A DNA stretch of 48,396 bases from Vitrella brassicaformis CCMP3155 (taxonomy: Eukaryota > Protista > Chromerida). Under the pieces are notes generated by a model. That model ran no database searches. It worked only from the letters and a program-made list of their open reading frames with translations, and had not been told where the DNA came from. Positions 437 to 16,830 of this stretch are shown in pieces; the first letter of the stretch is position 1, and the number at the start of each line of letters is the position of its first letter. The stretch lies in NCBI GenBank assembly GCA_001179505.1, contig CDMY01000577.1, positions 1 to 48,396 on the forward strand, in the 5' to 3' direction. The position numbers and the translations under genes were made by a program.

Positions 437-1645
437 GTGATGTGCGTGCAGGATCTGCCCAAGAAGGATCAGAAGTTCGTGCGCGACGCCATCGTCGCGC
501 TCGACGAGCAGCTGCGGCTCAACACCAAGGATGGACGTGTGGACCCCCGGGCAGATGAGTTCGCCGCTGCCATTCAGCGAGTGCTCGACAAGCGATTCCA
601 GCCCTCGTTCCACGTGCTCGTCGGCTTCGGCACACAGCTGGGCTATGCACTCAAGTATCGGCCAGGCACTATGGGCCTATTCCGGCTGAATGAGACCACC
701 GTGCTGGTCTACAAGAGCCCACGAGTAGAGATCCTGCCGAGTGGACGGGTGGCTGGTGCGCCGAGCGACCCGGCAGCGCCGCACAGCGAAGAATATGGCG
801 CGTCTAGGACAGGTACACATACAAGGGAAGAAGGGACAGGAATGAGCCAAGAAGCGCCCAGCTGATGTGTTCGTATCGCAGATAGTGGTGCCACTCCTGC
901 AGAGGACGACAGCAGAGAGGATGGATCTCCTGGCGGCAAGCGCATCAGAGTGGTGGAGGCCTCACCCGACCCAGATGACCAGGACAGCCCCGCCAGCTGT
1001 GCCGTCAAGCGGGCGCTCTCCATTGTCACTCAGCGCGTCAAGACTGAGGACACCAAGGACTTCCAGCTGCTTGCACAGGAGGTCAGGCGGCAGCTGACGG
1101 ACCAGCTGGGCCCCATATGGCACGTCATGGTGGGGAGGGACTTCGTCACGTGCCGCCCCAAGGGGTGCCGGAGCTATCTGCTGCTGCAGTGGGGCAGGCA
1201 TCGCGTGCAGTGCTACCAGCATGAGCAGGGGGCGTCGCAAGGGGGGCTGCTCGGGCTCATGATGAAGGGCGACATGTGGGGCTTTGTGACCTTCCTGGCC
1301 ATGGTGCTCTTCTTTCTCGTGCTCACTTTTCGGAAGCAGCTGTGCGGTGTGAATGCGGTGGAGATCCCGAGCGACTTTGGCATCGTGGGCACCATCCTCA
1401 CCGACATATATCGCACGTAAGGCTTGGGGACGGGAGATGGAGGGATGGAGGGAGGGGCACAGAGAGAGACGCACAAGCATTGACGCCCCTTTGCGCTGTG
1501 TTTGTGTGTTTGTGTGTGTGCGTGTGTGTTTCTGGGCAGTGTGTGTTCGGAGGCGGCGTCAGACGTGCTGCTGTTCGGTCTGTTCGTGCTCTTCGTCGCA
1601 TCCATGGCCATGAAGTTCGTCAAGGCCAGAATGAAGAGGGAGTGA
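437..1645 (+). CDS. Tandem dynein light chain type 1 (LC8)-like domain protein with two C-terminal transmembrane helices (3 exons)
   Basis: Introns 813-881 and 1417-1539 (GT-AG) join the ORFs in frame. Two LC8-like segments: 'DEFAAAIQRVLDKRFQPSFHVLVG' and 'QLLAQEVRRQLTDQLGPIWHVMVGRDF'. Hydrophobic segments 'MWGFVTFLAMVLFFLVLTF' and 'VLLFGLFVLFVASMAM'. Ends KARMKRE-stop. Confidence 0.75.
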
Positions 1646-3238: not shown

Positions 3239-6200
3239 ATGGATAGACAATGGATGAGGAGCGAGAAATGCCAGCGTGAATGGCGCAGGGGTCGGTCAGT
3301 GTGGGGTACGTGGTGGTTATCTGGGTTGCTGCTGCTGCTGATCCTGCCCGGGAGCAATGCATGGTCGGCGGCAACCACTGCTGGCCATTTGCAGTGGGCG
3401 CAAGTGACTTCGAGGTCTCCTCTGTGTGTGTTATTTCCATCAGGATGTTGGTATCGAAGGAGGGAGAGATCACGCTCCTTGGGCCTGTCGATATCAGTAA
3501 GCACACGCTACACGTCCTCATGCGTCGTCCTCCTCTGGGTGTATGTGTGTCTGAACCATTCATTCCAGACCCATCGTACACCACATCACGGCTGTCCTTC
3601 AAGAACGCCGGCGTACGTCAGTGGGACCTATATAACGATGCCACCAATCGTTTCAGGATCCGCAATACGGATCAAATCGACTACCTTACGCTATCTACTG
3701 CCGCCCTGTCCATTCTCAACGCAGCAGAGCTCGGCAGCACGCTGTGGGTGGAAAAGATGGCTACTATGGGTTCTGAGCTGTCCGTCAGGATGAGGACAGA
3801 CTTGGGATCGACACTGTCGCTGCACAACTATGCGGAGCTGGGCAGCAGCTTGTCGGTGCGATCTTACACTCGCCTGGGTTCCACATTGTCGGTCAGAGGT
3901 CGGTCGGTGTTTCATGCTGCCGTCTCCCTCGTCGATTCTGCGTTGGTCGGGAGCTCTATGTCTGTCAAGGAGTTTGTGCGCCTCGGCCGAAGTCTTTCCG
4001 TGTTCGACGTCGCGCAGATAGGGCGAACTCTTTCGGTGCTTGATATGACAACTATTGGCTCTTCCCTCTCTGTCCAGTCATTTTCTCGCCTGGGCAGCAG
4101 CCTGTCGGTCTACGGAACGGTCCGGTTTGGGTCTTCTTTATCAACGCTGGACTTCGCGCTTCTCGGTAGCTCCCTATCTCTGCGCGGGTCCGCACAATTC
4201 GGGTCGTCTCTCTCCATCCATGGCTCCACTACGGTGGAAGGAGCAATGTCGATTCATGACTTTACTCTGCTGGGCAATTCACTGTCTGTGATGGAGTACG
4301 CTTACCTCGGCAACGTCCTGTCTGTCTATAACCGAGCCGATATCGGCAGCAGTTTGTCGGTGACCAGCTTTCTCGACGTCGGCAGCAGCCTCAGTGTGGC
4401 TTCTTTCAGTCGGCTGGGGTCCTCCTTGAGCGTTTACGGAATGGCTCGGTTGGCGTCTTCGTTGTCGGTGCTTGATTTTCTCTTGTTGGGAAGCAGCCTT
4501 AGCGTGAGAGAATTTGCCCGACTGGGAAGCAGTCTATCACTCAGAAGCTTTGCGCAACTGGGGAGCAGCTTAAGTGTCGTTTCCTTTACGAGACTCGGCT
4601 CATCCATGTCCGTCTTCGGCCTGATGAGACTTGGATCGGCGCTCTCTGTCCTAGACGACATTAATATCGGAAGTTCGCTCAGCCTGCGATCGTTTGGGCG
4701 ACTCGGTTCCACCTTGTCAGTTTATGGCATCGCTAGACTGGGCAGCGCTCTGTCAGTGCTCGACAACGTAGCACTGGGCAGCAGTATAAGTGTTCGCTCA
4801 TTTGGAAGGCTTGGTTCGTCCTTGTCAGTTTACGGCATCGCTAGAATGGGAAGCAGTCTATCAGTCCTCGACAACGTCACTTTAGGTTCTTCTCTCAGTT
4901 TGAGGTCCTTTGTGGACTTCGGATCATCTCTCAGTCTTCAGTCTTTCGGGCGTCTCGGGTCTTCGTTGTCGGTTTTTGGCATTGCAAAGCTCGGAAGCGC
5001 TCTTTCGGTTCTCGACTATGTGGGGCTGGGGAGCAGTTTGAGCGTACGGAGTTTCGTTCAGCTGGGGAGTTCGCTATCACTGAGATCATTTGCGCGTTTT
5101 GGAAGTGGGCTGTCTATCTATGGGTATTCAGCAATGAAAGGCATGCTGTCTATCCAAACGTACACTGGCAAGACAGTTATGTATACCAAGGATGGAGCAG
5201 CTTATGGAGGCAGGCTTATTGGCAACTGGATTCTCGATGAGGTCTTCCCTTTCAGTCTTTCTGTGGCGTCGTACACTATAATTGGAAGCTCCCTGTCATT
5301 GCGAAACTTTGCAAGACTCGGTGCAGACCTTTCTGTCTGGGGTGTGGCGCGTTTGTCCTCAACTTTAAGCGTCTTGGACAACGTAGCACTGGGGAGCAGT
5401 TTGAGCGTGCGGAGCTTCGTGGAGCTGGGGAGTTCGCTATCACTGAGATCGTTTGCAAGAATGGGTGACACTTTGTTTGTGTTCGGCTTGGCCCGTCTCG
5501 CCAGCACCCTGTCCGTATTGGACTCCGTGGAGCTGGGAAGTTCGCTATCACTGAGATCCTTCGCGAGAATGGGTGACACTTTGTCGGTGTTCGGCTTGGC
5601 CCGTCTCGCCAGCACCCTGTCCGTATTGGACTCCGTGGAGCTGGGAAGCTCGCTATCACTGAGATCGTTCGCGAGAATGGGTGACACGTTGTCGGTGTTC
5701 GGCTTGGCCCGTCTCGCCAGCAGCCTTTCCGTATTGGACTCCGTGGAGCTGGGGAGCTCGCTATCACTGAGATCGTTCGCGAGAATGGGTGACACGTTGT
5801 CGGTGTTCGGCTTGGCCCGTCTCGCCAGCAGCCTTTCCGTATTGGACTCCGTGGAGCTGGGAAGCTCGCTATCACTGAGATCGTTCGCGAGAATGGGTGA
5901 CACGTTGTCGGTGTTCGGCTTGGCCCGTCTCGCCAGCACCCTGTCCGTATTAGACTACGTGTCTTTGGGCAGTTCTTTATCTGTCCGTCAGTTTGCATAT
6001 CTTGGCAGCACACTGTCTGTTGAAGACTCATCGACATTCAACAATGTTGAAATCCGCGGTACTTTGAATGTCGTCAGTGGAGCGACCCTTAATCTACAGG
6101 CTGGTTCGACATTCATACTGGATTCTAGCAGTCCGGGGGCGGTCACAATGGATACAACTGCTTGCAGTGTTATCCACGCCAGCGGTTGCAATAGTTCATC

Positions 6201-7592
6201 AGACAGACGACTGAAGAAGGCTATTCAGTCAGTGGAAGTTTATCTTTCGTCGGCTTCCCGTTCTGGGAGGCAGCAATTCTCGAGAAGCAAACGGAACCTT
6301 TCAGTTGTCTCGTCGGGGGATCGTGACAGCGTCGAGCATCTTATCGACAGGTTGCACCCCGTCAAGTTCGAATGGAAACAGGTACACATACGCCTCGTCA
6401 AGAAGCATCACAAATGGTCTATGCTGTGCAGACTCAAGAAGGCATCAAGGGATCGAATAGAGTGCACTTCGGCCTCATAGCGCAAGTCAGCATGCTCTTG
6501 ACCCAATATCCATTCGCCACTTTGCTCTGTCTTCAGGATGTGGCAACTTTGTTGCCTGAAGTTGTCTCAAAGGAACCCAGGACGGGCACATTGAGGATTC
6601 GCTACATGGTGTGTGTACACTCGACAAACGAGAAATCACATAAGGATCGATACAATATGTTGCTGCTCGTAACCATCAGGACTTGATTTCAATTCTTTTG
6701 GAGAGTGCCAAGCGGCTTAATCGTCGTCTCCGGGTATCTGCATTGCAGCAATGAAAAGGCAATCTTCATTTGTTTCCTTACTTGTCGCGGGTCGCAGGTA
6801 ATGGAGCGACAAGTTTCCAGCCTGCACTCCCCCGTGACCGCCCAATATGCTAATACCACAACGACTCCACGACCACCTGATGGCCCGATCGATACAGCAG
6901 TCAACCACCTCAACGCGCCTATGGACGCCCTCTCCTCTTTTTCTCCAAGCAAGCTTTTGTCTTGCCTCACAACTAACAGCACCCATGTGTCTCGGCGTCA
7001 TCCATTAATACTTTCAGTTGAGCGTCGTCTCAAGAGAACAGCAGTACATCTAAGGCATGTCTTCCAGAGGGAGGTGAGATATCTCTTGGCTGCTGTGAAG
7101 GCAAGTAGGTACCGCAAGATTGTCCACTCTGGCCTTCTTCATCGCATCCATGCTTGGGAGAAGCGGACTCCAAGTCTTCAACAGTTAGAACGACCGGCAA
7201 CAACACCTTTGGGTCCCGGAAGACGTAGACGGAGCTCGTTCGATGGCAGGTGGTGGTGGCCATGGAGAATATCGCAGCCCCCAAGCGTGGTTATGCTTAG
7301 GCGATATGCGAGTGAGAGAACGGTTGAGAGGAGAGAGGTCGACACTGTCAAGTCGCTGAGACGCAGGATGGACGACGACATCGTAAGGCGGCATAGTGAA
7401 GAGATTCGGCAGCTCAAGAAAGAGACAACGCGTCAGAATGAAGAGGTCACGTCACTGAAGGAACAGATCAGGCGACAGGAAGAAGAGACTAGGTTGCTCA
7501 AAGAGCAGCTGAAATCTCTTCTAACCTGGCAAGCCTCCTCTTTGCGCGCGCCAGCGCACGATGATTATACACGTGAGGAGGCACCACGATGA
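3239..7592 (+). CDS. Secreted 12-residue-repeat (predicted beta-solenoid) protein with a C-terminal Peptidase_S74/ICA autoprocessing chaperone domain and coiled coil; tail-fibre-like architecture
   Basis: Signal-like 'WWLSGLLLLLILPGSNA'. Introns 3394-3443 and 3497-3568, then a ~2.8-kb exon of LGSSLS[VL]xxxxx repeats. S74 motifs: SDRRLKK (6199-6219), RLHPVKFEWK, then after introns FGLIAQ-DVATLLPEVV and Y-MDLISILLESAKRLN. Late coiled coil 'EEIRQLKKETTRQNEEVTSLKEQIRRQEEETRLLKEQL'. The 3' end is approximate. Confidence 0.8.
5419..5958 (+). repeat. Intragenic tandem array of 5 near-identical 108-bp units (36 aa = 3 x 12 aa)
   Basis: Units start with gtggagctg at 5419, 5527, 5635, 5743 and 5851. 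Peptide unit VELGSSLSLRSFARMGDTLSVFGLARLAS[TS]LSVLDS. Confidence 0.95.
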
Positions 7593-8020
7593 TGTGGCGA
7601 GACAGCCTCTGCTTGTCGTCATATACTATATAATCGGTGTGTATGCTGTACAGTCATTATCATGCCTTTCGACAATTGCAATTGTGTGATGCAATTGAAT
7701 TTGTACAGTCAACTTCGTACCGTATTTGTACGGGGCAGTTGTGTATGTGGGTCAGCTGGGCTGAATCACTCTGTACACAGTCAAAAATGGGTTAGATAAC
7801 CTGGTCACCTCCCAAAGAGACTCAAATCACACCACCAGGGCGGAACAAGTGCAAAACCAGACAGGGCCCCCAACGGAAAAACCCGCTGCCCCATGCACTA
7901 AACCGGGCCTTTGCAATTGGAGAAGTGGGTTTTGGAGGCAGAAAACTGAGTTTCGGCTGTGTATGAGTTCGACTACAGATGTGTATGAATTCGACTTCAA
8001 ACTCTGAAGGATCTGTTTTA

Positions 8021-8086
8021 ATGCGTGTGTTGACTGTTTTGCTCTGGTCTGTGAGTCCCACCAGAGCAAGACAGTCACATCAGCAT
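8021..8086. other. Long intergenic hairpin (18-bp core stem)
   Basis: tgactgttttgctctggt (8031-8048) pairs with accagagcaagacagtca (8060-8077) with one G-U pair; 11-nt loop; weaker extension to 8021/8086. Confidence 0.6.
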
Positions 8087-8185
8087 GCATATATACACCC
8101 AAGAAACCCCCCGCTAGGCAGAAAATAAAACAGTAAGTATCCACTTCCCCTCCTTCCCCCTTGGCCTTTGCTGAATACATCAATG

Positions 8186-8800
8186 TCATTCGCTGTCCCA
8201 CCTTGACTCATGCACCGGCTCGCCTTGGCTATCGAACTCAGATACCCTCCCCGTCCGGATTGATCGATACAACAAGGTAGAAAGGGGCGACGAGCCCACC
8301 CATCCATTTACATCCGCACTTTGTACATGGCGAGACTGGTCGCCCCTTACGCGGAGGCAAGGCAGATGTTGGTTGTCCAGCACAAACGTCAAAGGCGAGT
8401 AGCCACATTCGGGCGTCGAGCAGATCGTCGAATCAGCATCATCTGCAGGGCAACGCAGATCTCGCCTCCAACACCTTTGCAAGCTCCTAACACACGCACG
8501 CGAGGGACCGAGGAGAACAGAAGGACGCCCAATGAATGCGTGAAGCGGACGTCTCTTTCCCTGTGGGGCCGCTCTTGAGGTCCGAGGTGAGGCCCGAGAT
8601 GGTGATGTTGCGCTTCTTCACCATCAGCCGACACGCATTCACACACTCTCACCTGAATGAACACCACACACACACACACAGAAGCATTGCACACATTTAC
8701 CCCGCCTATGCATTTAGGGGCGGTCAATAGGCGCCACTCTCAAGGTCTTACCTGCGCATACTCACTTCTGCACGCGCTCTGCATGTATGCACTTGGTGCT
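8186..8800 (-). CDS. Possible coding exons of an unidentified minus-strand gene
   Basis: Splice-like signals and a C-ending codon run (LMVKKRNITISGLTSDLKSGPTG, ~8560-8630). No consistent full model could be built. Confidence 0.2.
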
Positions 8801-9024
8801 GTTACACAGAGTGCAGACGAATCGCCAATCCCGCGGCAGCTGTTTTCGGAGCTGCCTCTCTTCACTTCCTCACCCAGATCTGACGAATCGCCAGGCACAC
8901 AAGCACCCTCAAGCTTTTATTGCTTGTGCAGATCGTCGATCGGCAGATCTGCGAGCTTTTTCCAAAGGAAGGCATTTCCTCCCCCTCTCCCCCCCCGACT
9001 GAACAAGGCGTGAAGCAGCGGACC

Positions 9025-11243
9025 ATGTGTTTTCAAAGAATGCTCAGCACTCTTGTCACCCTCATGCACCTCACCATCACCATCTCGCTATCAACACGCC
9101 ATCTATCATCCGCCCTGCGGCCCTCAGTGGCAGATCGGCACCTGCCTGCATTCCAGCTGTCGGCCACTGACGCTCTGCAGATCTTCGGTCGTCTGGCTGG
9201 GGACTTTCGTGGCGAGCGGGGGATCTTTTGTTCGCACATCACGCCGGAGGGGGAGGTCCTATTCCAGGGCAAGGAGAGGGTCACTATGGCCGAATTCCGG
9301 GTCAGAAAGGACGCAGGAAGGAAGGGGTCGATGTGTGTCCTCACATCATCATGTGTCTGTGCCTGTGTGCGCTCAGGACCGGCTTGCCAAGCTGCCATTT
9401 ACATGGTGCGTGGGATGGGAGGGCACGCCACTGGGGGCGAGAGGAATGCACTCGCGTGCGTATGAAATATATGTGCATGTGCCGTGGTGTGTGGCGGTTC
9501 TGAATGTCAGGCCCGCCCTTTCTGACGGTGAGGCGGCCGAGGCCGACACTTTCATGCGCCGCCTGCTCAAGGTCGGTATCGACCCAAAGTTCGACTATAT
9601 CATCTCGGAGGAAAACAGACGGTCGACCAATGAAAGACTCAGGTGGGCAGGCAAGCAATGACAAGGACAGGACGCACTCAGCAGGTGCACACAGATGCTT
9701 GCCTACCTGCTGCCTGCCCTGCCCACTTGTTGCTCAGGTCTGGTCGCGTGAAGCGTTCGAATGCGTTGATGGCTCTGCTTGACCCTAACAAGCGCACGGA
9801 TGAGGAGCGTGTGGAGCGTGCTATTCAGCGAGTCAACGAGTTTATGAGCCTCGACCCGCCAAACCCATATGCCGTCTACGAAGGCAGGACTGAGAAAGGA
9901 AAGACAACCATCTGCATCAGTGTGCTCGTCTGATGTGTGCAGTGTTCGGTCGCTTTGCTGGAATGGACAAGGCACAGTACTTGCACAAGTGAGCAGCGCA
10001 CCACAAGACACATCCGTCCATCCATCCATCCACCCATCGTTTCCCTATCTGTTCGGACGTGACAACCAGGAACCAGTTCGGACGTGTCGTTGAAGCTTGG
10101 GGCAGCGGTGAGGAAGGCCACTCACACACTGCATTCACGCAGTGACATCCCCCATTCATTTGTTTCCTTCTCTCGCCTTTCAGAGGCCGACGGTCTAGAC
10201 TTCCCCAGCTTCCTGGTCTTCTGCGGCGTGCAGGCGGGCGTGGGCAGCGGAGGCAAACTCGTGGGCGCCACACAGAGAGCAAAAGACGCCGGCGAAGATC
10301 CACTCAGGTAGGAACCATCGGCAATGATCCACCCGCAATCCTGCCGACGAACACTCCCTGTGTGGTTTGGCAGCGATCTGTCTTTGACTGAGATCGAGCA
10401 GTTCCGCGCCAAGCTGATGAAGGGGCCTGGGCCTGATGGGGCGCAGGCACTTGAAGACGAGGACGCTTCGGTGTCCGGTGAGGACAGAGCCCAAAAGCTG
10501 GCCGCTGTGCTCAACAGCCCAGCGCCTGAGCTCGGACCCAGCCAAGAGGCAAGCAGCTGCTTGCCTGAGACCTAATGTGAACTTTCTTTCTGCATACACG
10601 CCATGCCGAGCTCTCCTTGTCTTCTGTTGTGTGTGTGTGACAGGTGTCATGGCTGGACACGCGGTGGCGCGAGCAGTTCAATGGTGAGCAGCTGGCGGAC
10701 CTGATAGTGCAGAAGTACGGCGTGCCGTACGTCATCCACCCCAACCGACTTGACTGGATGGGAGGGCGGCGAAAGATGTTCTACCAGATCACGTGGAGAT
10801 ACCTGGGCGAGCCGGGATTTGAAATGACCAAGGTGAGCTGAGCGGGACTCAGACCCGTGTGCGGCTTCGCGTGGGTGTATGGTCGTGTCCGTACGTTTGT
10901 GTGTGCAATGCAGGATCAGTATTTGGATCTGATGGAGACATTGGCGTATCTGTTGGTGCGATGGAACCGAGTCGACCACTTCAGAAACCAAGTGGCAAAG
11001 TCAGCACGCACCACCAACACCCACACCCACTCTCACACACACGTGTGCAGTGCATACGCAAACAAATGATTGATGCGTTGTGTCCACACGTGTGTTGTGT
11101 TGTGTCTGGTGGTGTGCAGGACCCGTAAGGTGCCTGATGCGTACTTCGGTCGTGCGGTGCCTATTGCTCTGGATGTGCCAGAAGAGGAGGTGTCGGTCGC
11201 ACTGCAGGAAATCGACAGGCTACAGGAGCTATTCGGCCTGTGA
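9025..11243 (+). CDS. Probable plastid-targeted protein with a C-terminal DUF3067 domain (multi-exon); the DUF3067 part may be a separate gene
   Basis: Hydrophobic then Ser/Arg-rich N-terminus (MCFQRMLSTLVTLMHLTITISLS-TRHLSSALRPS). Spliced C-terminus FNGEQLADLIVQKYGVPY...QITWRYLGEPGFEMTK-DQYLDLMETLAYLL...FGRAVPIALD matches the remembered DUF3067 pattern (TGQELRQLLLDKWG.SYD...MWKYLEQ.SFP.SE.EY...LGKAVSIPLD). Confidence 0.65.
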
Positions 11244-13329: not shown

Positions 13330-14741
13330 CTACAGTTCGTCTTTCTCGGTGCTCTCGGGCGCGTCGAATGGCAGGTCCATGCCGTACTCGTGTGGATACC
13401 GCAAGAGCTCCCCGTAGTCGGTGAGCTTCGACTGCACCACACTCTCAAGCTTCTCCAGCATAGTTGCCAGCGTCAAGGACGCGTCTGCACATAACATACA
13501 CGCACACATACATACATACATACATACATACAAGGGGAAATAAATGGATGCAATGCAGCGCATAGGTTAGATGGGTGGTTGTGTGTCGTGCCGGTGGGTG
13601 GGCGGATGGGTCCCGGGGTGGGGGATTCTGACCTTCATCTAGTCCGGCGTCAGCGAGCATGTCGGTGACGTCCCTCTCGTGGTCGCCCTCTGAGTGCTGG
13701 ACGATGATGGCCTCGATTTCCTTTTCGTCGATGACGCCGTCCTTGTTGGCGTCATAGCTATCGAACTCCTTCTTCATGCTCTCCTCGTCCTCCTCAGACG
13801 CTGACAACGACACTCATGGGCATGCCTGATCTGCTTTACATCTGCCTCCATTTGTCTGGTGCATCTGTTAACTCACCCTCCTGCCCCTTGAACTCGGCGA
13901 AGCTGATCTGCCTGTTGCCATCCGTGTCCTGCTGCTGAAGAAGCACAGCACAACCACATCAGCAGCAGAGGCAATCAGCCGTCGATGCACATCGCATGCC
14001 GTTGGCCTCGCCTCTTTTCTCAGCTCACCTTGAGTATTTCGTCTATTTCGACCTTCATGAGAGCTGGATCTTCGCCCACATGCAGCAGCTTCTTGAACTC
14101 CTCAACCGTCAGCTTGCCGTCTGGATATACACACGACACATGCACGACACGAACAAGAGAGAGGTGCATGAGTGTGTTGAAAGCAAGACCGCTATTCTGC
14201 CACTCACCGCCGTCCTTGTCTACCGTCTTGAACCGAAGCTGCTCTCACACACCAACACCGACGCATCGATCGATCAGTGGCCTGCCTGCATGATCCCCGT
14301 TTCTTGCTCACTCACCGCAATATCCTCCTTGCCCTCTGCCGCCGCCGCCTCATCCTCGCCGAAGTATGCATCGTGCAATTCGCTGAGGTCGACAAATCCG
14401 CTCTTGTCCTTGTCGATGGCATCGAACTCGAGGTTGCTCTGCCGCATCTGCACCTGTGGGTGGAGCCTCTTGAGCCACTCGCTCATCTCCTTCTTGGTCA
14501 GCTTGCCGTCGCCGTCCTTGTCCAGCACCGGGAACAGCTTGCTCATCCGCTCCTCTATCTCAGGGCGCGCCAAGCCCAGCGAGTCCTCCAGCCCCTCGGT
14601 CTCGTCCATCATCTCGTCCGCCATCTCGTCGTAGCCGAAGTCACCCTCGGCCTCCTCGCCGAACGTGATGTCGTCCTCATCCTCCTGAGCCACCGACGCA
14701 GCCACCAGGAAGGCACCGAAGATCAGCAGTGATAATCTCAT
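13330..14741 (-). CDS. ER-lumenal multi-EF-hand Ca2+-binding protein (CREC family, apicomplexan ERC-like)
   Basis: Signal peptide MRLSLLIFGAFLVAASVA. EF loops DKDGDGKLTKKE, DKDKSGFVDLSE, DGKLTVEE, DTDGNRQISFAE and DANKDGVIDEKE. C-terminal KDEL-stop at 13330. Confidence 0.92.
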
Positions 14742-14910
14742 TTCTCCTTCAGCAAATGCTATAGTCCCAAACAGCTGCAGTCTGTCGGAGATGCTGCACG
14801 GCTGTGGGGGGGGAGTGTGGGATCGTCTTGCGAGCTTGGATCTGCAGAAACAATGAACAGCAAGATCCACGACTTCGCCAGCATCTCCGTGTCCTTGTTT
14901 GTGTTGTGGG

Positions 14911-16830
14911 ATGGTTGATCTGTACAAACAAGCTGAGGTGTCCCTTCGCGAGGCCGTCCTTGGTCAGGACTGGAGCCGTGTGAGAGAGTGGAGGCCCTCA
15001 GTTGTGGATGCGCGGGGCGAAATTGGCAGCATGGATGAATTAGTTGACTCGAGTGCAGAGGGGCCGCCTGCAATGACAGAAAGGCAACGACGGGAGGCAT
15101 ACCGACTGAAGACGCTTCCAGGTGGGAAACATGGGAGGGGACGCAGGGCAGGGACGAAGGAGAGCTGAGATCTGGACGGACGGTGATGAATCAATCAATC
15201 GTTTTGGTGTGTGTATTCACTGATTGACTGTGAAGGTTGTGTGTTTCTGCCGGCCTGGCTGAGTGAGGATGAGCAGCTTCTTCTGGCCCACGAGTGCGTC
15301 ACATCCTACATTGAGGCGAGCAACCAAGCCAGCGCACGAGCAGCCAGTGAGTGATTTATAAAGCAGCCAGTACTGCCTATTTGCTGTTTGTGTACTGTAA
15401 TCACAGCCCCCACACAGGACCAATCTCACCGGGTTCGAGGAGGCGGCACGGGAATTCTGGCGTACGTACGCACACTCTCAGCTATCTGCCGGGTGTAAAT
15501 AGAGGTCTGCGCATCTGCTGCTGTCTGTTCGGCTTTCAGCGTCAAATGAGCCAATGTTCACCAGGCTGCGATGGGCCACCCTGGTTGGTGAGAGGAACGC
15601 AAACAAACCTATCTGAGGACATGATAGGTGAATGGTGTCTGTCTGTCTCTGTCTTAGGGCTACCAATACAAGTGAGTGTCTGCGATGCGGCACCTACCTC
15701 CCTCCCCGTCTATCCCCTCCCATCATCATTCATCATGCCCTCCCTCTCCATTCCATTCGTTCGTTGCTTCGCCCGTCCATCAGCTGGACTACCCGCCAAT
15801 ACGACGACCGCCTGCCCTTCCCATATGGGCTCACGTGTCTCTGTCAGGAGATCATGACAGAGCTATCGCGCCAGTGTCCGCTGCTGGCTCAAGAGCTGCA
15901 CCTGACCGGCGACTACACACCGCAGGTCAGATCAGATCTATTGGGTCTCTGGGACAAAGGACCAGAGAGCGTCACCTCACCCGACGGTCAAACGAATGCA
16001 CACAGCTATCTTATCATTCATGTCATGTAGGCGGCCATAGTGAATCTCTACCGGCGGACCGACCGACTGAGAGGTGGGGAAGCACACCTCGCCAGTTGGT
16101 GACCGATCGATCGATCGATGCGGAAATATGCGGTGCGCGTGTGGCTGGCAGGGCACCAGGATGATGCCGAGACCGACACCACTTCGCCGCTCGTGTCCAT
16201 TAGGTAGGTACTTCTCGCCTCATGGTTACTCACAGTGTCCACACACGTGTCCCGTCCCCTGCCTGCGTCCCCTGCCTGCGTCCCCTGCCTGCTTTGTTCG
16301 CAGTTTGGGTTTGCCTGGCCTCTTCCTCGTTGGTGGCGACACAAGACAGTGAGTGAGCTGGCGGCTGAGGGAGGCAGGGAGGCAGTCAGAACAGAGCGAC
16401 ACCAATATGTGTGTGCGCTGCGCTATTCAGGCTGTCTCCCCAGCCCGTGGTGCTTCGCGGAGGCGACGTACTGCTGCTGGCCAGCACAGCCAGGAAGTCT
16501 TTCCACGGTACGCAGGCAGGGTGGTGGGACGGCACACACACCCTTGCCAAGAAGTATGCTCGGTTCTTTCTGTTTTCCTCAGGCATAGCGGCCATTATGG
16601 AGCCACAACCTGATGCCGACACACATGGCGGGCCAGACGGAGGGGAGCCAGCCCCGCCAACAGCGGCGGGTGCCGGTGCCGGTGCTGGCAGGAGGTGGCA
16701 GGAATCGACTGCAGTGGGGTCGTTGGAGGGTTTGAGTGGTGATGAGCGTGTGAGGCTGATGGACCTGCTGGCCAAGACACGTATCAATCTGAGCATCAGA
16801 CAGGTCAACCAGGGGGGCAGAGTGACGTGA
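14911..16830 (+). CDS. ALKBH1: AlkB homolog 1-like 2OG/Fe(II) nucleic-acid dioxygenase (many short exons)
   Basis: Spliced motifs PPHRTN, RLRWATLGYQY-WTTRQY, AAIVNLYRRTDRLRGHQDDAE (HxD), SPLVSISLG, LRGGDVLLLASTARKSFHG (distal His) and RINLSIRQV. Start approximate. Confidence 0.88.

What the first reader, a model, noticed from the sequence alone, without database searches (positions are those of the whole stretch)
3239..7592. Secreted phage-tail-fibre-like protein: ~55-60 x 12-aa solenoid repeats plus an S74 autocleaving chaperone
Seen in the sequence: signal peptide, a short beta-rich head (QWDLYNDATNRFRI), ~750 aa of LGSSLS[VL]xx[FVA]x[RE] repeats, then S-D-R-R-L-K, LHPVKFEW, FGLIAQDV..LLPEVV and a coiled coil. 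Established: Peptidase_S74/ICA domains trimerise and self-cleave through a Ser-x4-Lys dyad to fold triple beta-helices in phage tailspikes and fibres, and in MYRF; the dyad is intact here (6199, 6214). Inference: an alga exports a self-maturing trimeric beta-solenoid fibre, which could be an adhesin, a wall or flagellar-hair component, or an ice/mineral-binding surface (the regular Ser ladders fit that). It is fully intronised, so it is a domesticated gene rather than a prophage. I recall similar repeat proteins among unannotated algal predictions, but no functional description.
Basis: partly seen in the sequence, partly recalled or inferred. Interest (0 to 1): 0.8.

Follow-up and report, generated by a model that had tools for sequence, protein, structure and literature searches.

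The report
Algal secreted fibre with self-cleaving cap
A chromerid alga carries an intron-containing nuclear gene for a long repeat-built beta-helix rod ending in the self-cutting, three-chain "chaperone" cap of virus tail fibres; the family is shared with dinoflagellates, is labelled only automatically in databases, and is unstudied.

Summary
On the + strand, 3239-7592, there is a seven-exon gene model of 1331 codons. It has a signal-peptide-like start, about 58 twelve-residue repeats (36-residue super-period) in one 2.8-kb exon, then a complete Peptidase_S74/ICA domain split over four exons. The Ser-x4-Lys dyad is intact (6199/6214). An Arg-rich tail and a coiled coil follow.

No single exon passes Pfam. 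Taken exon by exon, the pieces tile a family S74 profile collinearly and without gaps. Intact homologues pass Pfam, and a homologue's model matches the MyRF, T5 and endosialidase chaperone structures.

Relatives are chromerid and dinoflagellate proteins, some from transcriptomes. The repeats recur with VIT-VWA and TSP1 domains. More distant kin are phage and giant-virus fibre proteins.

- There is no intron between SDRRLK and LHPVKFEW.
- The 3' end is one 795-nt exon.
- The rod is modelled as a single-chain, 18-residue-per-turn beta-helix, not a triple helix; handedness is unresolved.

Not shown: secretion, cleavage, and co-transcription of the repeats with S74 in this gene.

The scan has already noted eight other S74 genes elsewhere in this genome. 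Verdict: a new variant of a known kind, of moderate interest.

The parts
3239..3393 (+). Predicted exon 1: start codon and signal-peptide-like segment (basic n-region, WWLSGLLLLLILPG, SNA|WS). Unverified.
   Evidence: Sequence. Hydropathy maximum 1.45 over 19 residues. Donor gca|GTGGGC. No RNA cover. An alternative start at ATG 3280 in frame 1 is also hydrophobic.
3444..3496 (+). Predicted exon 2 (53 nt), a short linker. Unverified.
   Evidence: Acceptor TTTCCATCAG| and donor tca|GTAAGC. The phases close the frame between exon 1 and exon 3.
3569..6381 (+). Large exon 3. It holds a ~50-residue head (LSF..QWDLYNDATNRFRI..DYLTL), about 58 twelve-residue repeats (3730-6035), a non-repeat beta cap, and the first part of S74 up to KFEWKQ.
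   Evidence: Stop-free ORF, repeat statistics. hhalign of 6100-6381 against the family S74 profile: probability 94.8%, E 5e-8, profile columns 308-358.
5130..5260 (+). Break of 61 residues in the repeat register (..MYTKDGAAYGGRLIGNW..). It resembles the GGxLHGxW junction that lies directly before the S74 serine in homologues.
   Evidence: The single 61-residue spacing. The motif is seen in P0002, P0004, P0103 and P0130 and in the consensus of alignment A4.
5418..5961 (+). Five near-identical 108-bp (36-residue) super-repeats, the youngest part of the array.
   Evidence: Tandem Repeats Finder: period 108, 5.0 copies, 96% matches. DNA-run depth here is hundreds of times that of the flanks.
6199..6216 (+). 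S-D-R-R-L-K: predicted catalytic Ser (codon 947 of the model) and Lys (952). The predicted cleavage site is just before the Ser.
   Evidence: Sequence. Ser, Asp and Lys are invariant in the 52-sequence family alignment A4 and in A1.
6432..6485 (+). S74 exon B: TQEGIKGSNRVHFGLIAQ.
   Evidence: Aligns to profile columns 362-372, E 8.5e-4. Tiles the homologues in A3. Flanked by GTACAC..GTGCAG and GTCAGC.
6537..6608 (+). S74 exon C: DVATLLPEVVSKEPRTGTLRIRYM.
   Evidence: Aligns to profile columns 374-398, E 0.012. Tiles the homologues in A3.
6680..6733 (+). S74 exon D: DLISILLESAKRLNRRLR, the start of the C-terminal helix of the ICA domain.
   Evidence: Aligns to profile columns 400-413, E 0.008. 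Its last 13 nt (6720-6732, unique in the window) head an RNA-type contig that continues at 6797/6798.
6734..6797 (+). Intron (64 nt, GT..AG), the only one with read support.
   Evidence: Run X1, record 7: 13 loose letters equal to 6720-6732, followed by 6797-7511. Only 13 letters lie on the 5' side, under the tool's 31-letter rule, so this is suggestive rather than formal bridging.
6798..7592 (+). Last exon (264 codons plus stop): Pro/Thr linker, Arg-rich region, coiled-coil-like tail. No transmembrane segment.
   Evidence: Open frame. X1 contigs cover 6797-7511 and 7483-7639. Maximum 19-residue hydropathy 0.56. Only weak hits to coiled-coil Pfam families. No relatives among proteins of 145-462 aa.

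Best explanation
This is a nuclear gene of a chromerid alga, Vitrella brassicaformis according to earlier scan notes that I did not verify. It encodes a precursor of about 1331 residues.

Shown:
- About 700 residues of 12-residue repeats (LGSSLS-VRSFxR, i.e. two hexapeptides, with a 36-residue super-period).
- A complete S74/ICA domain with the Ser-x4-Lys dyad, split by introns.
- Membership of a chromerid and dinoflagellate gene family whose intact members pass Pfam and fold like the ICA domain.

Inferred:
- A signal peptide sends the precursor into the secretory pathway.
- The repeats form a three-faced beta-helix with 18 residues per turn. That gives about 39 turns, roughly 19 nm per chain.
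- The C-terminal ICA domain and its coiled coil bring three chains together and template the rod's C-terminal end.
- Ser947, activated by Lys952, then cuts the chain just before itself. This releases the 385-residue C-terminal piece and leaves a stable trimeric fibre outside the cell.
- The fibre most likely serves as a structural or adhesive element of the cell surface, wall or matrix.
For: Repeats and gene anatomy.

S74 in the window gene:
- The four exon pieces map in order, without overlap, to family-profile columns 308-358, 362-372, 374-398 and 400-413. They also tile the homologues in A3.
- Ser, Asp and Lys are invariant across 52 family members.

S74 in the family:
- Intact homologues score above Pfam's cut-off of 22 bits for PF13884: P0004 49.4 bits, P0031 54 bits, P0058 43.4 bits.
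- The AlphaFold model of the P0004 S74 region (pLDDT 77.5, core 88-98) has the MyRF ICA domain as best PDB match (7dc3, E 1e-4, probability 1.00). The next matches are the T5 fibre chaperone 4uw8, then 3gud and 3gw6.

Solenoid:
- The AF2 model has 4-residue strands every 6 residues.
- VIA-align gives Z 12-13 at about 4 A rmsd over 270-300 residues to tailspike and adhesin beta-helices.
- The nearest ESM-Atlas shapes are a giant-virus cluster (TM 0.70/0.78), a phage cluster and Bactofilin proteins.
- The repeats match phage families phrog_36281 (E 3e-31), phrog_5353 (E 6e-15) and phrog_5070 (E 9e-12).

Host gene rather than virus:
- Six short GT..CAG introns are predicted, one with a spliced contig.
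- Dynein light chain and EF-hand ORFs flank the gene.
- The nearest S74 domains are all from dinoflagellates: Alexandrium, Symbiodinium and MMETSP transcripts.
- A second genomic copy, about 92% identical over 6027-6554, differs by 14 synonymous and 13 non-synonymous codons, and only silently in SDRRLK and in VHFGLIAQ.

Extracellular role:
- The same repeats occur with VIT plus VWA in dinoflagellates (P0055, which has a signal-peptide-like start, and P0067) and with TSP1 in Vitrella (P0001).
- The family's S74 domain occurs with PAN domains (P0130).
Against: - Pfam does not call S74 on any single exon; the best is 12 bits against the 22-bit cut-off.
- RNA-type contigs cover only 6797-7639 and short multi-copy repeat words. 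No read shows the repeat exon and the S74 exons on one transcript, and the 5' exons are unsupported.
- The spliced contig has only 13 letters on its 5' side.
- The repeat model is of low confidence (pLDDT 58), and the handedness evidence conflicts. NCBIfam LpxA matches at E 1e-22 and Foldseek lists only left-handed beta-helix (LbH) enzymes, at rmsd about 14 A. VIA-align and the Atlas favour right-handed, bactofilin-like helices.
- No trimer model was possible.
- Cleavage, secretion and location are untested.
Confidence: 0.65

Rival explanations
1. The gene is part of an integrated virus (giant virus, polinton-like virus or virophage) and encodes that virus's host-attachment fibre, not a cellular protein.
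For: S74-capped fibre proteins are reported as ubiquitous across polinton-like viruses recovered from most eukaryotic groups (PMC12220804). They also occur in Ostreococcus and Heterosigma giant viruses (PMC12906663 and PMC13659346). A repeat relative, P0016, sits on a gene-dense, intron-free contig with DHFR-TS, asparagine synthase, RNase HII, YqaJ and glycosyltransferases, which looks like a giant virus. The nearest Atlas shape is a Nucleocytoviricota cluster. GC falls to 0.50 over 6001-8000, against about 0.57 nearby.
Against: Six spliceosomal-type introns are predicted, three of them inside the S74 domain, and one has a spliced contig. Ordinary cellular ORFs flank the gene and no viral hallmark was seen nearby. 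The closest S74 and repeat relatives are chromerid and dinoflagellate proteins fused to eukaryotic adhesion domains. A scan of IMG/VR with P0004 found nothing.
Confidence: 0.07
2. The S74 domain here serves only as a trimerisation module, or cuts in another context (for example inside the cell, as in MYRF), so the product is not a released extracellular fibre.
For: An earlier scan note (s1-231063, unchecked) reports a Vitrella paralogue family that lost the lysine, so non-cleaving use of the domain may exist in this alga. The long insert between SDRRLK and LHPVKFEW is 12 residues longer than the corresponding stretch of P0004 and could affect the active site. The signal peptide is unverified.
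Against: Ser, Asp and Lys are intact here and invariant in the family. The paralogous copy changes them only silently. There is no transmembrane segment after the domain and no DNA-binding domain before it, so the MYRF logic does not apply.
Confidence: 0.15
3. The model joins unrelated pieces or describes a decaying gene: the repeat exon is a separate gene or pseudogene, and only the 3' part (6680-7639) is transcribed.
For: The RNA-type run covers the 3' exon at depth about 10, yet none of the unique parts of the big exon or of exons B and C. No annotated protein of this gene appeared in the protein database within the searched length ranges.
Against: A stop-free frame of 1066 codons is very unlikely without selection. 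The S74 domain begins in the same exon and frame as the repeats and continues collinearly through three further exons with matching phases. Transcript-derived homologues carry repeats and S74 on one ORF: P0005, P0110, P0116, P0128. Poly-A 3' bias and contig filtering can explain the holes in cover.
Confidence: 0.1

Closest known systems
Phage tailspike and tail-fibre proteins with a C-terminal intramolecular chaperone domain (endosialidase endoNF 3gw6, K5 lyase KflA 2x3h, T5 L-shaped fibre pb1 4uw8, GA-1 appendage 3gud)
   Same: A beta-helical rod is followed by an S74/ICA domain with the Ser-x4-Lys dyad and a helical C-terminus. A homologue's model matches these chaperone structures. The repeats match phage protein families.
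   Different: This gene is nuclear and eukaryotic, with introns and a signal-peptide-like start. It has an insert of roughly 40 residues inside S74 and a 264-residue tail with a coiled coil after the domain. No enzymatic or receptor-binding head was recognised. The rod is a very regular 12/36-residue repeat.
S74-capped fibre proteins of eukaryotic viruses (polinton-like viruses, prasinoviruses, Heterosigma akashiwo virus)
   Same: Large modular repeat proteins carry a single C-terminal Peptidase_S74 domain (PMC12220804, PMC12906663, PMC13659346). The nearest predicted shape is a Nucleocytoviricota cluster. Repeat kin lie on a giant-virus-like contig.
   Different: No viral genes surround this gene, it has introns, and its closest sequence relatives are cellular chromerid and dinoflagellate proteins. 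The viral examples described carry laminin-G, FhaB-like or collagen repeats rather than this 12-residue unit.
MYRF / MrfA membrane-tethered transcription factors
   Same: They are the only studied cellular eukaryotic proteins with the ICA domain (PMC3742443, PMC3828593). The MyRF ICA structure 7dc3 is the best structural match of the family model.
   Different: The window gene has no Ndt80-type DNA-binding domain and no transmembrane segment after the ICA domain. A repeat rod takes the place of a transcription factor, and the presumed topology is luminal or extracellular.
Hexapeptide-repeat left-handed beta-helix acyltransferases (LpxA, LpxD, GlmU) and bactofilins
   Same: Six-residue periodicity with 18 residues per turn. 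NCBIfam LpxA matches at E 1e-22 over the helix part and PDB LpxA at E 3e-4. Relatives hit Pfam Bactofilin.
   Different: Scores are far below the family cut-offs (80 bits against 231). Only the helix part aligns and there is no catalytic or C-terminal domain. The window repeats do not hit PF04519. The resemblance is of repeat type only.

Membership tests
Peptidase_S74 / intramolecular chaperone auto-processing domain (PF13884) | HMM score above Pfam's gathering cut-off (22 bits) | tested here: inconclusive
Tested exon by exon only. The best score is 12 bits, E 0.27, on 6372-6686, because the domain is split over four exons. Intact homologues score 36-54 bits.
Peptidase_S74 / intramolecular chaperone auto-processing domain (PF13884) | Complete, collinear domain: SDxRLK, L-x-P-V-x-F, GFIAQE, P-x-x-V, and the Y-x-DLIA helix | tested here: met
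   The exon pieces align to family-profile columns 308-358 (E 5e-8), 362-372 (E 8.5e-4), 374-398 (E 0.012) and 400-413 (E 0.008), in order and abutting. Alignment A3 shows the same tiling.
Peptidase_S74 / intramolecular chaperone auto-processing domain (PF13884) | Catalytic Ser and Lys spaced Ser-x4-Lys | tested here: met
   S at 6199-6201 and K at 6214-6216. Both are invariant in 52 relatives.
Peptidase_S74 / intramolecular chaperone auto-processing domain (PF13884) | ICA fold | tested here: inconclusive
   Met for homologue P0004, whose seven best PDB matches (ten of the top twelve) are ICA domains: 7dc3 at E 1e-4, then 4uw8, 3gud and 3gw6. The window's own domain could not be folded without joining exons.
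Peptidase_S74 / intramolecular chaperone auto-processing domain (PF13884) | Trimerisation and autocleavage at the Ser | not testable with these tools
   Needs multimer modelling or biochemistry.
Viral or phage tail fibre (gene of a virus or provirus) | Located in a viral genome or bounded integrated element, intron-free | tested here: not met
   Predicted introns. Cellular ORFs flank the gene. No IMG/VR relative of P0004.
MYRF-type membrane-bound transcription factor | Ndt80-like DNA-binding domain before the ICA domain and a transmembrane segment after it | tested here: not met
   No such Pfam hit. Maximum 19-residue hydropathy after the domain is 0.56.
LpxA/LpxD hexapeptide acyltransferases | Score above the NCBIfam cut-off, full-length match including the C-terminal domain | tested here: not met
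   80 bits against a cut-off of 231. Only model positions 5-172 of 254 align.
Bactofilin (PF04519) | HMM match above the 27.9-bit cut-off | tested here: not met
   The window repeats do not hit it at E up to 1. Distant relatives P0016, P0085 and P0094 do, and P0058 scores 26.9 bits, just under the cut-off. The Atlas lists a Bactofilin cluster at TM 0.54.

The most novel reading that the evidence does not exclude
Myzozoan algae (chromerids and dinoflagellates) took a viral fibre-assembly module into their own genomes and expanded it. They now use S74-capped, self-chaperoned beta-helix trimers as a major building material of an extracellular or extrusive structure, such as a wall layer, an adhesive coat or an extrusome filament. 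That would be the first cellular structural use of this phage-type assembly mechanism.
Probability: 0.25. Interest if true: 0.8.

Novelty: new variant of a known kind. Interest (0 to 1): 0.55.

Why it matters
In studied cellular proteins, the self-cleaving ICA/S74 domain is known only from MYRF-type transcription factors. Everywhere else it caps virus fibres and spikes.

A host-encoded, intron-bearing and probably secreted fibre family in chromerids and dinoflagellates would show that eukaryotic cells use the viral "fold, trimerise, cut off the chaperone" route to make their own extracellular rods. It offers a defined candidate for unknown surface or wall fibres in the closest photosynthetic relatives of apicomplexan parasites and in coral symbionts. 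It is also a clean case for studying gene flow between viruses and hosts.

The claim is directly testable by proteomics of the secretome or wall and by a Ser or Lys mutant cleavage assay.

Tried and rejected
- Pfam on the raw ORFs gave no S74 call: 12 bits.
- I first looked for an intron between SDRRLK and LHPVKFEW. I rejected it because homologues carry a variable insert there, and the paralogous copy shows coding-type substitutions in that stretch.
6798-7592 is one open frame, and two overlapping RNA-type contigs cover 6797-7639 without a break.
- The IMG/VR scan with P0004 found nothing.
- The word search with the last exon found nothing among proteins of 145-462 aa.
- PDB sequence search with a homologue's S74 gave only one relevant hit, the S16 long tail fibre 6f45 at E 8e-4.
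- Foldseek of the repeat model against the PDB gave no match at E <= 0.001.
- The ESM-Atlas feature search gave scores of 0.86 or less, so leads only.
- Five full-text searches for S74 or endosialidase chaperone together with dinoflagellate or chromerid terms, and look-ups in the chromerid genome paper and the Symbiodiniaceae viral-invasion paper, found no description of this host family.
- Ice or mineral binding was dropped; no evidence points that way.
- A bacterial promoter and terminator scan is irrelevant for a eukaryote.
- I could not verify the organism myself. The name comes from earlier scan notes and from the best named paralogue, P0001 of Vitrella brassicaformis at 35% identity.
- The large exhaustive protein search was not used, because relatives were plentiful.


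Full report
**Observation.**
- A stop-free frame runs from 3280 to 6480.
- Within exon 3 (3569-6381), a loose motif finds 58 repeat units, and 54 of the 57 spacings are exactly 12 residues.
- Residue autocorrelation peaks at lag 12 (0.35), lag 36 (0.47) and lag 72 (0.40); no off-period lag tested exceeds 0.14.
- The unit LGSSLS-VRSFxR is two hexapeptides. Three units form a 36-residue super-repeat.
- The last five super-repeats are 96% identical at the DNA level (108 bp x 5, 5418-5961).
- One 61-residue break near 5130-5260 (..MYTKDGAAYGGRLIGNW..) copies the GGxLHGxW junction. In homologues this junction lies directly before the S74 serine. This suggests an old fusion of two fibre units.

**Gene model.** The model comes from sequence, homology and one spliced contig.

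| Exon | Coordinates |
|---|---|
| 1 | 3239-3393 |
| 2 | 3444-3496 |
| 3 | 3569-6381 |
| B | 6432-6485 |
| C | 6537-6608 |
| D | 6680-6733 |
| E | 6798-7592 (includes the stop) |

- The model has 3993 coding nt, or 1331 codons. The six introns are 50-72 nt long and all are GT..CAG.
Homologues instead carry a variable 30-45-residue insert at that point, so the stretch is best read as coding.
In fact 6798-7592 is one open frame, and two overlapping RNA-type contigs cover 6797-7639 without a break.
- One of those contigs starts with 13 letters identical to 6720-6732, a word unique in the window. That implies removal of 6734-6797 (GT..AG). The tool asks for 31 letters on both sides of a joint, so I count this as suggestive support for one intron.
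- No read supports the two 5' exons, and none links the repeat exon to the S74 exons. The unique parts of the big exon have no cover in the RNA-type runs.
- Two alternative starts both give a signal-peptide-like N-terminus: ATG 3239 with an intron, or ATG 3280 read straight through. Secretion is therefore plausible but not established.

- Pfam on raw ORFs gives only 12 bits for PF13884.
- Against a 52-sequence profile of the family's S74 region (A4), the pieces align in order and abutting:
  - end of exon 3 to columns 308-358 (probability 94.8%, E 5e-8);
  - exon B to 362-372 (E 8.5e-4);
  - exon C to 374-398 (E 0.012);
  - exon D to 400-413 (E 0.008). MAFFT shows the same tiling.
- Ser (6199), Asp and Lys (6214) fall in columns that are invariant across the family.
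- Intact homologues pass Pfam's cut-off: P0004 49.4 bits over the whole model, P0031 54 bits, P0058 43.4 bits.
- An AlphaFold model of the P0004 S74 region (pLDDT 77.5, core 88-98) has the MyRF ICA domain 7dc3 as its best PDB match (E 1e-4, probability 1.00). The T5 fibre chaperone 4uw8, 3gud and 3gw6 follow.
- DNA runs reveal a second copy about 92% identical over 6027-6554. Its listed differences make 14 synonymous and 13 non-synonymous codons, and only silent changes fall within SDRRLK and within VHFGLIAQ. Its indels fall inside the predicted intron 6486-6536.

**The rod.**
- Sequence profiles see a hexapeptide-type helix: NCBIfam LpxA at E 1e-22 (80 bits against a cut-off of 231) and PDB LpxA at E 3e-4.
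- Distant relatives hit Pfam Bactofilin.
- The AlphaFold model of 5200-6381, built with 35 sequences, is of low confidence (pLDDT 58; about 65-72 in the best-modelled repeats). It shows 4-residue strands every 6 residues.
- Foldseek lists almost only left-handed-helix enzymes, but at rmsd about 14 A and E >= 0.1.
- VIA-align superposes the model on right-handed beta-helices of tailspikes, depolymerases and TPS or autotransporter adhesins (Z 12-13, rmsd about 4 A, 270-300 residues). The ranking is flat and generic.
- The nearest ESM-Atlas shapes are a Nucleocytoviricota cluster (TM 0.70/0.78), a phage cluster (TM 0.57/0.82, rmsd 1.6 A) and Bactofilin proteins.
- I conclude that the rod is a single-chain, three-faced beta-helix with 18 residues per turn. 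That gives about 39 turns, or roughly 19 nm. Handedness is unresolved but leans right-handed. An intertwined triple helix cannot be excluded without a trimer model.
- The repeats also match phage families phrog_36281 (E 3e-31), phrog_5353 and phrog_5070, and weakly a tail collar fibre family.

**Relatives.**
- The repeat exon finds 95 proteins.
  - Many carry PF13884.
  - Named sources are Vitrella (P0001, TSP1 plus repeats), Chromera, Symbiodinium, Durusdinium, and MMETSP or EukProt transcripts.
  - Transcript-derived ORFs such as P0005, P0110, P0116 and P0128 carry repeats, S74 and a coiled coil on one reading frame.
- The S74 region of P0004 finds 52 proteins. Every named one is from a dinoflagellate. 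UniRef calls two Alexandrium members 'Peptidase S74 domain-containing protein'.
- Domain partners confirmed by Pfam are VIT plus VWA (P0055, which has a signal-peptide-like start, and P0067), PAN (P0130), EF-hand (P0101), F5/8 type C (P0031), and phage Collar plus Gp10_C (P0085).
- A repeat relative without S74 (P0016) lies on a contig that looks like a giant virus.
- The last exon has no relatives among proteins of 145-462 aa.

**Context.**
- ORFs with dynein light chain (950-1420) and EF-hand (14274-14927, minus strand) domains flank the gene. Other notes place hydrogenase-maturation genes further along the window.
- I saw no viral hallmark genes near the gene.
- GC dips mildly to 0.50 over 6001-8000.

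**Mechanism.** The best-supported reading is a secreted precursor. Its C-terminal ICA domain and coiled coil bring three chains together and template the rod. Ser947/Lys952 then cuts off the 385-residue C-terminal piece, leaving a stable trimeric fibre.
- The anatomy and family membership are shown.
- Secretion, trimerisation, cleavage and the structural or adhesive role are inferred. The basis is the established behaviour of S74 domains (Schwarzer 2007 as cited in PMC13659346; PMC3742443) and the extracellular domain partners in relatives.
- Rivals, with my probabilities:
  - integrated virus fibre gene, about 0.07;
  - non-cleaving or intracellular use of the domain, about 0.15;
  - chimeric or decaying gene model, about 0.10.

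**Novelty.**
- The papers I found describe S74 fibre proteins in polinton-like viruses and algal giant viruses and in MYRF.
- None describes a host-encoded family in chromerids or dinoflagellates.
- Databases label the domain automatically.
- Within this scan the family has been noted before on other DNA of the same genome. Eight notes describe S74 genes, one of them a 10-kb twelve-residue-repeat fibre locus. Those notes name the organism as Vitrella brassicaformis and mention Perkinsus relatives; I did not test either point.
- I rate this a new variant of a known kind, with moderate interest.

Pfam, SignalP-type and structure runs on the joined spliced protein were not done.

Noticed in passing
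window 5410-6025: In two DNA runs the summed contig depth over the 108-bp repeat block is about 4000-11000, against 14-25 on the single-copy flanks. In the RNA-type run it is 20-250 against 10. The five assembled copies cannot explain this. The unit must be present in many paralogous arrays, or arrays are collapsed in the assembly.
   Followed up: partly
window 6027-6554: A second genomic copy, about 92% identical, shows up in both DNA runs as extra contigs with depth added on top of the single-copy level. Ser, Asp and Lys are kept, and the indels fall only inside the predicted intron 6486-6536. It is probably a close paralogue elsewhere in the genome.
   Followed up: partly
window 5202-6037, minus strand: Two long antisense ORFs (245 and 253 aa) run through the repeat block. 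They consist of the same 36-residue periodicity read backwards, and I take them to be by-products of the repeat rather than genes.
   Followed up: no
L002:7586-10345 and L003:2084-4843: P0016 is a 919-aa repeat relative with a Bactofilin-type helix and a conserved N-terminus shared with P0023, P0032, P0048 and P0057. It lies on a gene-dense contig with DHFR-TS, asparagine synthase, RNase HII, YqaJ exonuclease and glycosyltransferases. The contig looks like an algal giant virus carrying a related fibre.
   Followed up: partly
window 950-1420 (+) and 14274-14927 (-): ORF fragments with dynein light chain type 1 (E 5e-7) and an EF-hand pair (E 6e-11) flank the gene. These are ordinary cellular neighbours.
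   Followed up: no
P0008, P0011, P0012, P0014, P0043 (Symbiodiniaceae and unnamed): Many long dinoflagellate relatives keep the 12-residue rhythm but with degenerate, proline-containing units (for example LDFLHLGPSALLRS). They may be fast-evolving or decaying members of the family.
   Followed up: no
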